A stretch of 62,998 nucleotides of DNA, counting the filler, from Octopus bimaculoides (Eukaryota): the NCBI RefSeq assembly GCF_001194135.2. It is 5 parts of 5 records of this genome, joined end to end, with 100 filler letters (N's around TTAATTAATTAA, not from the genome) between each part and the next. Parts side by side here need not be neighbours in the genome. Positions count along the whole stretch, not along the records: positions 60,398 to 62,998 come from NC_069006.1; 4 more parts are not named here. The stretch is one strand, 5' to 3'. The notes below the pieces were generated by a model that did no database searches, had not been told where the DNA came from, and saw only the letters and a program-made list of their open reading frames with translations. Position numbers and translations under genes: made by a program. Of this stretch, positions 59,702 through 62,998 are shown piece by piece (the stretch's first letter is position 1; each line of letters begins with the position of its first letter).

Positions 59702-60474
59702 TGGTTGAATCGTCTCTGGTTTCGACGATTAGGGTTCAGTTGTTCGAGTGATTAACTTTCTTGATCATTGAATTAGCGTGTAGATGGCTGAATATTCCGT
59801 TGACACATGTACCCTTAATGTAAATCTCAAGTAGAATATGTGTGACACTCCATGTATGACAAGGTTGTACCTTTTGATTTACAGGTACAATCCATCCAAC
59901 AAACTGTAACATTTCCGTCTACCCAATTTTATTCGGTAGAAATTAAATCAAGCCAATACTATCGACTTCAAAAAGACTGAAGGCGGGATTTGAACTCAGA
60001 ACATACGGGGCCAGGACAAATACCTCAATGCAACTTGCTCCGTAATATAAATATTCTGTCAAATCACAGCTCTTAATGAGGACTTCTTATACAAGCACAA
60101 TGCTGAAGGGAACATTCGATTATATTGATCCTAGTACTTGACGAGTTCTTTATTTTATTAACCCCGAGGTCGACTTTGCCTTTCATCCTTTCGGGGTCGA
60201 TTAAATAAGTACTAGTTACGCACTTAGTCTCTTCCTCCAACTTTGAGGCCTTGTGCTTCCAGTAGAAAGGATTGTTATTATATATATATATATATATNNN
60301 NNNNNNNNNNNNNNNNNNNNNNNNNNNNNNNNNNNNNNNNNTTAATTAATTAANNNNNNNNNNNNNNNNNNNNNNNNNNNNNNNNNNNNNNNNNNNNAAT
60401 GTTGTGGCGGACAAAAAACAAGACACGAAAACAAACAGAAAAGGTTTTACGGCCAGACGAGAAAAATTATGTGA

Positions 60475-60524
<50 letters not shown>

Positions 60525-60868
60525 GTATGTATGTGTATAAATATACACAAATATATATGTGTATGTGTGTATAAATACACACACATATATATATATATAT
60601 CTTAATCTTTTACTTGTTTCAGTCATCTGATTGTGGCCATGCTGGGGCACCACCTTGAATGGTTTTAGTCAAACACATCAACCCTAGGGCTGGACACTAT
60701 TCTGTTGCAGGATTACTCATTACTCATTTGTCAACTTGTCTCCTTAATAATAATAATAATAATAATGGTTGCAAATTTTGGCACAAGGACAGCAATTTCG
60801 GGGGTGAGGTGAAGTCGATTAGCTCAACCCCAGTGTCCAACTGGTACCTATTTTATTCTTTTCTATTC

Positions 60869-61221
60869 CAGGAGAATATTCCTATAGATCGAAATTGATA
60901 CAAGACCTTACCTTGGGGCTTACATGTATCCCGACAGGCAGGAATAATGTGTCAACCTATATCTACACATTCAAATTCTGAATTCAAACGTCATGCACAG
61001 CATTTATGAGAAAAGACCAGTAAATTCAAGCCACGGCAAAACCATCGGATATGAGTGGGGAAAATTAAATAATTAAAAAGTAATGTAATAATACATTACA
61101 GAGAATATACCATAAACAATTAATAATTATTTATGAATATATCAATGGCCAAACATGTTATCATAAAATACACAGAGGTTAAGGTGTTGTATCAATTTCT
61201 ATCTATAGGAATATTCTCCTG
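60869..61221. mobile_element. Unclassified MITE-like element with 42-bp TIRs
   Basis: CAGGAGAATATTCCTATAGATCGAAATTGATACAAGACCTTA (60869-60910) matches the reverse complement of 61180-61221 at 40 of 42 positions. No TSD was seen. Confidence 0.7.
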
Positions 61222-61334
61222 AAGAGACAAATGGGACCCTTAGTAGGTTCCTAACATCGAAATTGCAATAGAGAAATAACCATTTATTTTTAAGTTGTGG
61301 ATTCTATGTCATGTCACCCACAGATAGCATTTCA

Positions 61335-61620
61335 TCAGCATCATTATCGTCGTTTAACATCCGCTTTCCATGCTAGTATGGGTTGGATGATTTGACTGAG
61401 GACTGGTGAAACCAGATGGCTACACCAGGCTCCAATCTGATTTGGCAGAGTTTCTACAGCTGGATGCCCTTCCTAATGCCAACCACTCAGAGAGTGTAGT
61501 GGGTGCTTTTACGTGCCACTGGCACAAAGGCCAGTCAGGTGGTACTGGCAACGGCCACGCTCGAAATGGTGTATTTTATGTGCCACCCGCACAAGAGCCA
61601 GTCCTGGGGCACTGGCAATG
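61335..61620 (-). mobile_element. Repeat family 2, sense to and downstream of the Schlafen-like gene
   Basis: Reverse complement of the 38630-39020 body and tail. Confidence 0.8.
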
Positions 61621-61624
61621 TATA

Positions 61625-61855
61625 TATTTGTGTGTTTGTGTCTGTGTTTGCCCCCAGCACTGCTTGACAACTGGTGTTGATGTGTTTACATCCCCATAAC
61701 CTAGTGGTTCGGCAAAAAAGACTAATAGAAGAATAAGTACAGGGCTTAGAAAGAATAAGTCCTGCGTTTGATTTGTTCAACTAAAATCCCTTAAGGTGGT
61801 GCTCTAGCATAGCCACCATCAAATAACTGAAACAAGTAAAAGAATAAAAGAATAA
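61625..61855 (+). mobile_element. SINE family 1, 3' half, antisense and immediately downstream of the Schlafen-like stop codon
   Basis: GTGTTTGCCCCCAGCACTGCTTGACAAC...GAATAAGTAC...GCATAGCCACC...CTGAAACAAGTAAAAG. Confidence 0.8.
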
Positions 61856-61884
61856 AATAAATACAACAACGACAACATGAACAG

Positions 61885-62661
61885 TTAATTATCAGTCTTT
61901 AATGCTTCAATCTTTTTCTTAATATTTTTAATTCTAGTCTGAAATATCTGTTTCACATCTTTTACAGTTATATTGATAATGTCCTGGTCATCGCAAAGTT
62001 TGACGCCGGCCAAAGTCTTCATAAATACTCTACCTTCTTCGTTGGCATGCAAAGGGTGCAGGTTGATCCCAGGAACAATGTTATTCCAGATCATGGTGTC
62101 CGGGTCCCATGGCTTGATGTGTATTGCAATGACAAACCTGTGTATAACTTCATCTGCTTTGACCATCATGCAAGCATGCTCATCACACCAGCATTTGGCG
62201 TATGACTGGCAAAGATGGCTTCGCTGGCGCTCCTCTTTCGGGAAAGTTTCACTCTCCAGGTTGATCTTACTGCATATTCGATAAGCATCAGCCATAGATA
62301 CCGTCTGACTAATGACAGGCATGAAATGAACCCCATATCGCTTGACGTCGACTTGTGGTATGTAGCGCTTCATCAGATTGTCGAGATTGACTTTTAGGTG
62401 GTCTCTCTGAAATAGTGTTAATTGTAAACCTATGATTGTGCCATCATCTGCCACACCAAGGTAGACTGAGCCTCCTTGACCTGTGTTCAGAAAAGCATTC
62501 AGGGTGCGAGAAATAGACCTCCGCGTGCGTTTTTGGTTTTCTTGGGTCCACGGTGGTAGCTCTTCGACTGACAGGTTTCTGTGGCATTTGAATTCGTGTC
62601 TGGAATCCTCTTCAAATGGAATCATATTGTTTTCCCAGTAGAAGTCGACATATTCATTCAT
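61885..62661 (-). CDS. Stand-alone Schlafen-like (AlbA_2 domain) protein, 258 aa, encoded in one coding exon
   Basis: Uninterrupted non-repetitive ORF. It contains FEEDSRHEFK (E18-x4-E23-F-K25, same spacing as the Schlafen catalytic E-x4-E-x-K) and LNAFLNTGQGGSVYLGVADDGTIIGL (the AlbA_2 signature AF-N-GG-x3-G-V-x-D-D-G). The C-terminus QTRIKNIKKKIEALK is coiled-coil-like. There is no P-loop or helicase domain. Confidence 0.88.
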   Translation of the reverse strand: MNEYVDFYWENNMIPFEEDSRHEFKCHRNLSVEELPPWTQENQKRTRRSISRTLNAFLNTGQGGSVYLGVADDGTIIGLQLTLFQRDHLKVNLDNLMKRYIPQVDVKRYGVHFMPVISQTVSMADAYRICSKINLESETFPKEERQRSHLCQSYAKCWCDEHACMMVKADEVIHRFVIAIHIKPWDPDTMIWNNIVPGINLHPLHANEEGRVFMKTLAGVKLCDDQDIINITVKDVKQIFQTRIKNIKKKIEALKTDN

Positions 62662-62664
62662 GAT

Positions 62665-62690
62665 CTACAAAAATAAAAAAATGAAAAATG
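62665..62690 (-). other. 3' splice acceptor immediately upstream of the Schlafen-like exon
   Basis: Minus strand reads TTTTCATTTTTTTATTTTTGTAG|ATCATGAAT: a polypyrimidine tract and AG (62666-62665), then 3 nt before the ATG at 62661. Confidence 0.75.
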
Positions 62691-62772
62691 TTTTAAAAAA
62701 TAAATGTTAAATACCACAACATATAATTATTTAAAAAATAAATTAAGACATGGCAACGTGTGTGTGTGTGTA

Positions 62773-62998
62773 TTCTTTTACTTGTTTCAGTCGTTTGACT
62801 GCGGCCATGCCGGAGCAGCACCCTTAGTCAAACAACTCGACCCCTGGACTTATTCTTTGTAAGCTTAGTTCTTATTCTGTTTGTCTCTTTTGCTGAACAG
62901 CTAAGTTACGGGGACATAAACACACCAGCATCAGTTGTCAAGTGATGGCGGGGAAAACAAACACAGACACACAAATACATATATATGTATATATATGT
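62773..62998 (-). mobile_element. SINE family 1, in the intron upstream of the Schlafen-like exon; runs off the window
   Basis: Reverse complement of the 3' end and body. Confidence 0.85.

What the first reader, a model, noticed from the sequence alone, without database searches (positions are those of the whole stretch)
61885..62661. Stand-alone Schlafen-domain nuclease candidate in a probable cephalopod
Seen: intact ORF with E18, E23, K25 and D72/D73 in AlbA_2 motifs, no helicase or SWADL-type extension, and a basic coiled-coil tail. Established: SLFN11, SLFN13 and SLFN14 use this acidic site to cleave tRNA/rRNA; C. elegans single-domain Schlafen-like proteins (TOFU-1/2, SLFL-3/4) form the PUCH piRNA-processing nuclease; prokaryotic Schlafens act in anti-phage defence. 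Inference: this is an uncharacterised RNase that would need to dimerise (possibly through the tail) and could act in antiviral defence, piRNA processing or turnover of tRNA-derived SINE RNAs.
Basis: partly seen in the sequence, partly recalled or inferred. Interest (0 to 1): 0.72.

Follow-up and report, generated by a model that had tools for sequence, protein, structure and literature searches.

The report
Octopus single-lobe Schlafen nuclease gene
This is an intact, already-annotated Octopus bimaculoides gene for a small one-domain Schlafen-type RNA-cutting enzyme; it belongs to an uncharacterised family that is conserved from sponges to amphioxus and nematodes, so it is a real but fairly ordinary find whose substrate is unknown.

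Summary
Window 61885-62661 (-) is an intact 258-codon ORF, 100% identical to Octopus bimaculoides LOC106880676 (269 aa with a 10-codon upstream exon). It passes Pfam SLFN_AlbA_2 (35.5 bits, cut-off 25.3) and carries an exact Schlafen Ex4ExK motif (E18..E23.K25) plus D72. A high-confidence AlphaFold model (pLDDT 94.6) matches only Schlafen nuclease domains and the SAMD9 tRNase domain. There is no second lobe, linker or helicase.

It is not an oddity of cephalopods. It is the octopus orthologue of a ~260-aa family found in sponge, cnidarians, many protostomes, amphioxus, a hemichordate, a tunicate and a rhabditid nematode. Across 171 members the catalytic residues are about 95-99% conserved, and five potential metal ligands are essentially invariant (H27, H88, H149, C157, C159). 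NCBI names some members "tofu-2-like" or "schlafen-like protein 2". dN/dS between two octopus species is 0.26-0.43, and I found no octopus paralogue.

Most likely it is a metal-dependent endoribonuclease with a conserved cellular RNA-processing role. An arms-race immune effector is less likely, and the substrate is unknown. The "basic coiled-coil tail" is a conserved amphipathic helix that is only mildly basic. The need to dimerise and the tRNA-SINE idea are unsupported. UniProt and Pfam already record the domain, so this is a new member of a known kind.

The parts
61885..62661 (-). Main coding exon ORF, 258 aa plus TAA stop (61885-61887). This is LOC106880676 of Octopus bimaculoides, a single-lobe Schlafen/AlbA_2 protein.
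62662..62682 (-). 3' splice acceptor. It consists of a polypyrimidine tract plus AG (62665-62666) and then codon ATC (62662-64), which joins the 10-codon upstream exon (MHCKFKLLSQ) of isoform X1. The in-frame TAG at 62665-62667 is part of the acceptor.
62581..62610 (-). Catalytic motif E18-DSRH-E23-F-K25-C-H27. This is the Schlafen Ex4ExK signature followed by the family-invariant His27.
   Evidence: motif definition in PMC13056530; E23/K25 align to SAMD9 E196/K198
62428..62499 (-). AlbA_2 core NAFLNTGQGGSVYLGVADDGTIIG (residues 55-78). It contains the third catalytic acid, D72 (62446-62448).
   Evidence: D72 aligns to SAMD9 D241 and to the second D of the SLFN11 'GVDD' motif
62398..62400 (-). 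His88, conserved in 169/170 members. Candidate metal ligand.
62185..62217 (-). H149-x7-C157-W-C159, essentially invariant. Candidate zinc site specific to this family. The pattern differs from the SLFN HxC...CC finger.
   Evidence: SLFN5 ligands in PMC8789055
62032..62058 (-). HPLHANEEG motif (residues 202-210). E208 is conserved in 156/165 members and is a possible fourth acidic residue.
61891..61989 (-). C-terminal amphipathic helix, residues 225-257. Its hydrophobic positions 228/231/236/240/244/247/251/254 are conserved across the family.
61652..61863 (-). SINE-like repeat starting 22 nt after the stop codon, presumably in the 3' UTR. The alignment to the sister-octopus contig L002 runs into this repeat.

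Best explanation
The ORF is the main coding exon of O. bimaculoides LOC106880676. This gene is the octopus orthologue of an ancient family of ~260-aa proteins for which I found one copy per species wherever I could check. Each member consists of one Schlafen/AlbA_2 nuclease lobe, a helical insert with an invariant His/Cys cluster, and a C-terminal amphipathic helix.

Most likely mechanism. It is a divalent-metal-dependent endoribonuclease. E18, E23 and D72 (possibly with D19 and E208) hold the catalytic metal. K25, R52 and nearby basic residues bind a structured RNA. The His/Cys cluster binds zinc to stabilise the fold. The conserved terminal helix either packs on the domain or mediates self-association.

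The family is conserved from sponge to chordates, evolves under purifying selection, lacks any fused sensor or regulator domain, and yielded no paralogue in the octopus. Its job is therefore more likely a conserved cellular RNA-processing or turnover step (tRNA or small-RNA-precursor class) than an arms-race immune function.

Shown: gene, fold class, motif conservation, phyletic spread, selection. Inferred: catalysis, metal and zinc binding, substrate class, oligomeric state.
For: Gene and fold.
- Intact ORF, 100% identical to the RefSeq protein, with a canonical GT-AG 5' intron.
- Pfam SLFN_AlbA_2 hit above the gathering cut-off.
- AF2 model with pLDDT 94.6 and pTM 0.90.
- All significant Foldseek PDB hits are SLFN5/11/12/13/14 nuclease domains, the SAMD9 tRNase domain and bacterial AlbA_2 protein 3lmm (E 2e-5 to 2e-2, prob >=0.99).

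Active site.
- Best solved-structure match by sequence profile is SAMD9 7ksp (E 7e-5 to 1.4e-4).
- D19/E23/K25/R52/D72 align to SAMD9 D192/E196/K198/R221/D241. In SAMD9, E196 and D241 are essential for cleavage, D192A only partly reduced antiviral activity, and K198 and R221 are needed for tRNA binding (PMC10246899).
- Exact Ex4ExK motif (PMC13056530).
- Conservation across 171 members: E18 163/164, E23 160/165, K25 161/165, D72 161/170, H27 167/167, H88 169/170, H149 165/166, C157 165/165, C159 166/166.

Distribution and selection.
- Present in sponge, cnidarians, molluscs, annelids, nemertean, brachiopod, flatworm, priapulid, myriapod, crustaceans, insects, amphioxus, hemichordate, tunicate and the nematode Auanema.
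- 121 representatives at E<=1e-30.
- dN/dS is 0.26-0.43 against a second octopus species, and substitutions avoid the catalytic core and the tail.
- Only one O. bimaculoides protein was retrieved, and there is no nearby paralogue.
Against: - No biochemical or expression data exist for any member outside nematodes; I found no paper on the family.
- TM-scores to solved structures are modest (TMq 0.34-0.44, best TMt 0.52).
- I could not read the model's coordinates, so the clustering of the acidic residues and of the His/Cys set rests on homology, not on measured distances.
- The position of SAMD9's essential E218 is Ser49 here.
- O. bimaculoides has Ala179 where 84% of the family has Glu.
- Some Schlafens with apparently intact sites, such as SLFN5, do not cleave tRNA in vitro (PMC8789055).
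- A constitutively active stand-alone tRNase would be toxic, so an unidentified regulator or a narrow substrate must be assumed.
- A housekeeping role is an inference from evolutionary pattern only.
Confidence: 0.6

Rival explanations
1. It is an inducible antiviral or stress tRNase that works like SLFN11/SLFN13/SAMD9. On infection or stress it cleaves specific tRNAs or rRNA and shuts down translation.
For: - All characterised structural relatives with this active site are tRNA/rRNA nucleases used in immunity (PMC5862951, PMC10246899, PMC13056530).
- The closest solved sequence relative is the SAMD9 tRNase domain.
- Giant-virus and poxvirus Schlafen-like proteins are the top viral structural matches.
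Against: - One copy found, purifying selection (dN/dS 0.26-0.43) and deep one-to-one conservation are unlike immune Schlafens, which duplicate and diversify (bioRxiv 10.1101/2024.01.12.575368).
- There is no sensor or regulatory domain, whereas 97% of prokaryotic Schlafens are fused to one (PMC13056530) and SAMD9 and SLFN11 are multidomain.
- No PADLOC hit.
Confidence: 0.2
2. It is the ancestral counterpart of nematode PUCH. It would be a germline nuclease that defines the 5' ends of piRNA or other small-RNA precursors.
For: - It has one SLFN fold per polypeptide, like the SLFL proteins (PMC10567574).
- NCBI names orthologues 'protein tofu-2-like' or 'schlafen-like protein 2', and SLFL-2 is TOFU-2.
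- Auanema, a rhabditid nematode, has a full family member with every invariant residue.
- One relative is fused to a CCHC zinc knuckle (P0103).
Against: - PUCH is an obligate heterotrimer of three SLFL paralogues, one of them anchored by a transmembrane helix. Only one family member was found in octopus, and its tail is charged and amphipathic, not a transmembrane helix.
- Capped 21U-type precursors are a nematode peculiarity. The PUCH paper states that C. elegans lacks Zucchini, which other animals use.
- I could not align the octopus protein directly to TOFU-2, so the link rests on database names.
Confidence: 0.12
3. It is a non-catalytic nucleic-acid-binding protein, a pseudo-nuclease comparable to SLFN5 on tRNA.
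For: - SLFN5 binds but does not cleave tRNA in vitro (PMC8789055).
- The SAMD9 E218 equivalent is Ser49.
- Octopus has an E179A change.
Against: Near-invariance of E18, E23, K25 and D72 over more than 160 sequences spanning Metazoa is hard to explain without catalysis.
Confidence: 0.06
4. It is a chance ORF, a pseudogene or transposon-derived sequence embedded among SINEs.
For: SINE-like repeats lie on both sides of the ORF, and the coding sequence sits in a single exon.
Against: - It is full-length and intact, and has orthologues across animals.
- It is under purifying selection.
- It has a canonical spliced 5' exon in the RefSeq model.
Confidence: 0.02

Closest known systems
C. elegans SLFL proteins of PUCH (TOFU-2/SLFL-2, TOFU-1, SLFL-3/4)
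   Same: Each polypeptide has one Schlafen fold. The acidic catalytic residues match those of TOFU-2. NCBI names family members after TOFU-2. A rhabditid nematode carries a full family member (PMC10567574).
   Different: PUCH is a heterotrimer of three paralogues with a membrane anchor, and it is specific for m7G-capped precursors with U at position 3. The octopus has a single family member that I could find, no transmembrane helix, and a conserved His/Cys cluster that the PUCH paper does not mention. I made no direct sequence comparison with TOFU-2.
SAMD9/SAMD9L tRNase SA (AlbA_2) domain, PDB 7ksp and 9o0d
   Same: It is the best solved-structure match by sequence profile (E about 1e-4) and gives the best target-normalised TM-score (0.52). 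It is a single lobe. D192/E196/K198/R221/D241 align with D19/E23/K25/R52/D72.
   Different: SAMD9 is a ~1,600-aa STAND protein with SAM, SIR2, P-loop, TPR and OB domains. Its E218 corresponds to Ser49 here, and it lacks the CWC motif. It is interferon-induced and fast-evolving.
Mammalian SLFN11/12/13/14/5 N-terminal nuclease core
   Same: The Ex4ExK motif plus Asp, and the AlbA_2 fold. The octopus protein aligns best to the catalytic C-lobe.
   Different: The mammalian core is a two-lobe pseudo-dimer with a bridging domain and an HxC...CC zinc finger, followed by a linker (SWADL) and often a helicase. The octopus protein has one lobe and none of the extensions.
Vertebrate SLFNL1
   Same: An orphan protein with a single Schlafen domain, conserved catalytic residues and unknown function. 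One barnacle family member is named after it (bioRxiv 10.1101/2024.01.12.575368).
   Different: SLFNL1 is about 400 aa with an unrelated N-terminal region. No vertebrate protein appeared among the named hits, and orthology was not tested.
Prokaryotic Schlafen (pSlfn, Cash, Avs9) defence nucleases
   Same: The Ex4(E/D)xK motif and a single AlbA_2 lobe.
   Different: 97% are fused to sensor domains and lie in defence islands (PMC13056530). The octopus protein gives no PADLOC or NCBIfam hit.

Membership tests
Schlafen/AlbA_2 nuclease domain (Pfam PF04326) | Profile HMM match above the curated threshold | tested here: met
   35.5 bits against a gathering cut-off of 25.3, residues 36-105
Schlafen/AlbA_2 nuclease domain (Pfam PF04326) | Catalytic Ex4(E/D)xK motif | tested here: met
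   E18-DSRH-E23-F-K25. Conserved in at least 160 of about 165 family members. Motif as defined in PMC13056530.
Schlafen/AlbA_2 nuclease domain (Pfam PF04326) | Third acidic residue after the GG..(F/L)GV strand (rSLFN13 D248, SAMD9 D241) | tested here: met
   D72 aligns to SAMD9 D241 and to the second D of the SLFN11 'GVDD' motif. Conserved in 161/170 members.
Schlafen/AlbA_2 nuclease domain (Pfam PF04326) | Fold similarity to solved Schlafen or AlbA_2 structures | tested here: met
   The top 31 Foldseek PDB hits are all SLFN, SAMD9 or 3lmm, with probability >=0.99. TM-scores are modest, 0.32-0.52.
Schlafen/AlbA_2 nuclease domain (Pfam PF04326) | Acidic residues cluster in 3D; Mg2+/Mn2+-dependent RNA cleavage | not testable with these tools
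   The model's coordinates cannot be read and no biochemistry is available. Clustering is inferred by homology to SAMD9 (PMC10246899).
Mammalian SLFN core (groups I-III) | Two AlbA_2 lobes plus a bridging domain in one chain (pseudo-dimer) | tested here: not met
   258 aa with a single AlbA_2 match and a single beta-sheet lobe
Mammalian SLFN core (groups I-III) | CCCH zinc finger HxC...CC (SLFN5 H266, C268, C302, C303) | tested here: inconclusive
   That spacing is absent. Instead H27, H88, H149, C157 and C159 are invariant, with the pattern H-x7-C-x-C. Whether the two sites are equivalent was not tested.
Mammalian SLFN core (groups I-III) | Linker (SWADL) domain and C-terminal helicase (groups II/III) | tested here: not met
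   The stop comes after residue 258 and orthologues end at the same point. No such Pfam hits.
PUCH / SLFL proteins | One SLFN fold per polypeptide, with catalytic acids (as in TOFU-2) | tested here: met
   Direct alignment to TOFU-2 was not possible. The link comes from NCBI names and the Auanema member.
PUCH / SLFL proteins | Heterotrimer of three SLFL paralogues | tested here: not met
   Only one O. bimaculoides protein was retrieved by single-sequence and profile searches, and there is none within the 26.6-kb locus. Highly divergent paralogues cannot be excluded.
PUCH / SLFL proteins | C-terminal transmembrane anchor (SLFL-3/4) | tested here: not met
   The tail is charged and amphipathic, with 8 K/R and 6 D/E in 36 residues.
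PUCH / SLFL proteins | Cap- and U3-dependent cleavage of piRNA precursors | not testable with these tools
   This needs biochemistry or genetics.
SAMD9/9L | Active-site set E184/E196/E218/D241 | tested here: inconclusive
   E196 and D241 (and D192) align to E23 and D72 (and D19). E218 aligns to Ser49. E184 lies outside the aligned region, and E18 is a plausible equivalent.
SAMD9/9L | STAND multidomain architecture (SAM, SIR2, P-loop NTPase, TPR, OB) | tested here: not met
   The protein is 258-269 aa and contains only AlbA_2.
Prokaryotic Schlafen defence systems | Match to defence-system models; fusion to sensor domains | tested here: not met
   No PADLOC or NCBIfam hits. No fused domain.

The most novel reading that the evidence does not exclude
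This ~260-aa protein represents the ancestral animal single-lobe Schlafen nuclease from which the nematode PUCH subunits descend. In most animals it would act, as a zinc-stabilised homo-oligomer, in a so far unrecognised and conserved step of small-RNA or tRNA 5'/3'-end processing, for example in the germline. That would make Schlafen-type cleavage an ancient part of animal RNA biogenesis rather than a vertebrate immune innovation.
Probability: 0.12. Interest if true: 0.8.

Novelty: new member of a known kind. Interest (0 to 1): 0.4.

Why it matters
Schlafen nucleases are known from three settings: vertebrate innate immunity, bacterial anti-phage defence and nematode piRNA processing. A minimal one-lobe Schlafen with an intact active site and an invariant His/Cys cluster is conserved from sponges to amphioxus, and its function has never been studied. 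That pattern suggests an older, general RNA-processing role for this fold. The family also offers a small, tractable enzyme for asking how a single Schlafen lobe recognises and cuts RNA. For the octopus genome itself the result is modest: the gene is already annotated and its domain already recognised.

Tried and rejected
- NCBIfam and PADLOC scans gave no hits.
- The Rfam scan of the piece returned only sub-threshold miRNA-like matches on TA/CA microsatellites. ARAGORN found no tRNA. The 'tRNA-derived SINE' idea therefore has no support here.
- The first AF2 run, with 17 sequences, was poor in the catalytic N-terminus (pLDDT 68.6). It was replaced by the 78-sequence run.
- One structure submission and one paper look-up failed for technical reasons, and one paper query was rejected for its syntax. 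All three were repeated.
- Literature searches for the family, its NCBI names, or Schlafens in molluscs and cnidarians found nothing relevant. The apparent 'PUCH' hit in the Lophotrochozoa RNAi paper was an author's name.
- I could not obtain TOFU-1/2, SLFL-3/4 or SLFNL1 sequences with these tools, so there is no direct alignment or phylogeny.
- I could not read the model's coordinates, so there are no distance measurements for the acidic or His/Cys residues.
- AF-multimer was not available.
- The weak Cas2 (7kft), Dickkopf and Cullin_Nedd8 matches were judged to be chance.
- The chance-ORF, pseudogene and TE reading was rejected on orthology and dN/dS.

Full report
**1. What is in the sequence**

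The piece (window 60398-62998) contains one long ORF, on the minus strand at 61885-62661. It is 258 codons from ATG to TAA. The ORF is 42.6% G+C, against 34-37% in the flanks.

The protein is 100% identical to Octopus bimaculoides LOC106880676 isoform X1, which is 269 aa and which UniRef calls "Schlafen AlbA-2 domain-containing protein". The whole piece maps without mismatch to chromosome CM046626.1 of assembly GCA_001194135.2.

The 11 extra N-terminal residues of the RefSeq protein come from a small exon about 5.2 kb upstream. That exon reads ATG CAT TGC AAA TTC AAA TTA TTG TCT CAG and ends at a GT donor. It is spliced to ...tttttgtag|ATC ATG, so the in-frame TAG just upstream of the ORF's ATG is the splice acceptor. 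Orthologues start near the ORF's own ATG, so either start is plausible. They also end where the ORF ends, so no downstream exon is missing.

**2. Domain, motif and fold**

Pfam SLFN_AlbA_2 (PF04326) matches residues 36-105 at 35.5 bits, above the 25.3-bit gathering cut-off. E18-D-S-R-H-E23-F-K25 is an exact instance of the Schlafen catalytic Ex4ExK motif as defined for SLFN11 and its prokaryotic homologues (PMC13056530).

Single-sequence and profile comparisons with solved structures place the match on the catalytic C-lobe of SLFN11 and SLFN12. With the family profile, the best match is the SAMD9 tRNase domain (7ksp, E 7e-5 to 1.4e-4). In that alignment D19, E23, K25, R52 and D72 correspond to SAMD9 D192, E196, K198, R221 and D241. 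In SAMD9, E196 and D241 are essential for tRNA-Phe cleavage, D192A only partly reduced antiviral activity, and K198 and R221 are needed for tRNA binding (PMC10246899). SAMD9's fourth essential acid, E218, corresponds to Ser49 here.

An AlphaFold2 model built on a 78-sequence family alignment is confident, with mean pLDDT 94.6 and pTM 0.90. Against the PDB, its top 31 Foldseek hits are all SLFN5/11/12/13/14 nuclease domains, the human and rat SAMD9 tRNase domains, or the bacterial AlbA_2 protein 3lmm. TM-scores are modest, 0.32-0.44 on the query and up to 0.52 on the single-lobe SAMD9 target. This is a divergent member of the fold, not a close copy. Against viral predicted structures, the best hits are a 260-aa Catovirus protein and poxvirus v-Slfn.

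I could not read the model's coordinates. The clustering of the acidic residues is therefore inferred from homology, not measured.

**3. The family**

This is not an isolated cephalopod gene. Sequence and profile searches recover proteins of roughly 250-300 aa from these groups:
- Non-bilaterians: a sponge (Ephydatia) and cnidarians (Nematostella, Acropora, Xenia, Clytia and others).
- Lophotrochozoans: gastropods, bivalves, a chiton, cephalopods, annelids, a nemertean, a brachiopod and a flatworm.
- Ecdysozoans: a priapulid, a myriapod, crustaceans, a mayfly, an orthopteran (a longer 883-aa protein carrying the domain) and the nematode Auanema.
- Deuterostomes: amphioxus, a hemichordate and a tunicate.

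An exhaustive HMMER scan of 1.84 billion representatives finds 121 at E<=1e-30 and 629 at E<=1e-10.

In a 171-sequence alignment the catalytic residues are nearly invariant:

| Residue | Conserved |
|---|---|
| E18 | 163/164 |
| E23 | 160/165 |
| K25 | 161/165 |
| D72 | 161/170 |

Five potential metal ligands are equally conserved, as is a further glutamate:

| Residue | Conserved |
|---|---|
| H27 | 167/167 |
| H88 | 169/170 |
| H149 | 165/166 |
| C157 | 165/165 |
| C159 | 166/166 |
| E208 | 156/165 |

The H-x7-C-W-C pattern differs from the HxC...CC zinc finger of mammalian Schlafens (SLFN5 H266, C268, C302, C303; PMC8789055). In rSLFN13 that finger is essential for folding (PMC5862951). I read the cluster here as a family-specific zinc site, which remains to be tested.

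NCBI names several members "protein tofu-2-like" or "schlafen-like protein 2". The PUCH paper defines SLFL-2 as TOFU-2 (PMC10567574). The Auanema protein (P0231, 247 aa) keeps every invariant residue of the family. The family therefore reaches into rhabditid nematodes and is at least closely allied to the PUCH subunits. I could not obtain TOFU-2 itself to test this directly. No paper in the searchable library describes the family.

**4. Evolutionary behaviour**

A genomic contig from a second octopus species (L002, 87% nucleotide identity) carries the same uninterrupted 258-codon ORF. dN/dS is 0.26-0.43 depending on the method. Of the 37 amino-acid differences, 23 lie between residues 101 and 190, and residues 43-74 and 205-244 have none.

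Only one O. bimaculoides protein appears in any search, and there is no second copy within the 26.6-kb locus. The amphioxus orthologue is split over about seven coding exons, so the single-exon octopus CDS reflects lineage-specific intron loss.

**5. The tail**

Residues 225-257 form one long, confidently predicted helix. Its hydrophobic positions (228, 231, 236, 240, 244, 247, 251, 254) are conserved across the family. The last five (240-254) follow a 4-3-4-3 spacing.

The tail has 8 K/R against 6 D/E (pI 8.9), and the whole protein has pI 7.1. The hydrophobic periodicity peaks at 3.6 residues, as expected of an amphipathic helix, rather than 3.5. It could pack on the domain or mediate self-association. 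A coiled coil is not demonstrated, and it is not a transmembrane anchor like that of SLFL-3/4.

**6. Interpretation**

The best-supported reading is a metal-dependent endoribonuclease of the Schlafen type, built from one lobe. It has a structural zinc site and a conserved C-terminal helix, and it acts on a structured RNA.

Four observations point to a conserved cellular RNA-processing or turnover role rather than an arms-race immune effector:
- One-to-one conservation across animals.
- Purifying selection.
- No fused sensor or regulator domain.
- No paralogue found in the octopus.

The antiviral tRNase reading remains possible (about 0.2), because every characterised relative with this site is used that way. 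A PUCH-like role in small-RNA precursor processing is the more novel alternative (about 0.12). It is supported only by database names and the nematode member. It is weakened by the lack of the paralogue partners and membrane anchor that PUCH requires.

The single-lobe SAMD9 domain is active alone in vitro (PMC10246899), and a bacterial AlbA_2 domain alone is toxic (PMC12680541). The suggestion of tRNA-derived SINE RNA turnover has no support: the flanking SINE-like repeats show no tRNA-like segment.

**7. Verdict**

The gene and its domain are already in public annotation, so this is a new member of a known kind. What is of moderate interest is the family. It is an unstudied, pan-metazoan, minimal Schlafen nuclease with an invariant active site and His/Cys cluster. 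Interest: 0.4.

Noticed in passing
window 60586-60691 (+), 61652-61863 (-), 62771-62953 (+): Three copies, one of them truncated, of the same SINE-like repeat (head TATTCTTTTACTTGTTTCAGTC...GGCCATGC...CACC) bracket the ORF. One starts 22 nt after the stop codon, and the alignment to the sister-octopus contig L002 runs into it. Further copies lie elsewhere in L001. ARAGORN and Rfam find nothing tRNA-like in them.
   Followed up: partly
window 60869-60910 and 61180-61221: A 42-nt inverted repeat, 95% complementary, encloses 269 nt. It looks like a MITE or a foldback element.
   Followed up: no
window 61330-61640: Another repeat-like block (…CGTCGTTTAACATCCGCTTTCCATGCTAGTATGGGTTGGATG…), followed by two direct copies of a GTGCCAC..GCACAA.AGCCAGTC.. 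unit. It is probably a second interspersed repeat family.
   Followed up: no
window 60470-60600 and 62953-62998: (TA)n/(CA)n microsatellites give a series of sub-threshold Rfam miRNA-like matches (mir-3149, mir-297, mir-466 and others). All fall far below their gathering scores, so they are low-complexity artefacts.
   Followed up: yes
window 62125-62127 (residue A179): O. bimaculoides has Ala at a strand position where 139/165 family members have Glu, as does the aligned SAMD9 sequence. The sister octopus has Glu and Argonauta has Lys. This is a cephalopod-specific relaxation of unknown consequence.
   Followed up: partly
L003 6001-11664 (amphioxus) compared with L001 15818-16597: The amphioxus orthologue's CDS is split into about 7 exons, and the Nematostella gene spans 3.5 kb. 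In octopus all but 10 codons sit in one exon. This indicates intron loss or retrogene-like replacement in the cephalopod lineage.
   Followed up: partly
proteins P0103, P0131, P0152, P0129: Some relatives carry extra parts. P0103 (330 aa) is a CCHC zinc-knuckle fusion. P0131 is an 883-aa orthopteran protein with the domain at its C-terminus. P0129 and P0240 are 436-440-aa shrimp proteins with N-terminal extensions. P0152 is a 2,337-aa protein with 20 partial matches to profile positions around 60-87.
   Followed up: no
BFVD hit A0A1V0SAW2 (Catovirus CTV1, 260 aa): The best viral structural match is a giant-virus protein of almost the same length, annotated 'Divergent AAA domain' (E 2.7e-7, TM 0.45). 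This may mean giant viruses carry a stand-alone single-lobe Schlafen.
   Followed up: no
L001 1-22 (upstream neighbour, opposite strand): The nearest annotated neighbour, about 10 kb upstream of the gene, is a bZIP (Maf-type) transcription factor gene. In Auanema the neighbours are unrelated (WD40 and peptidase M49 genes), so conserved synteny is not evident.
   Followed up: no
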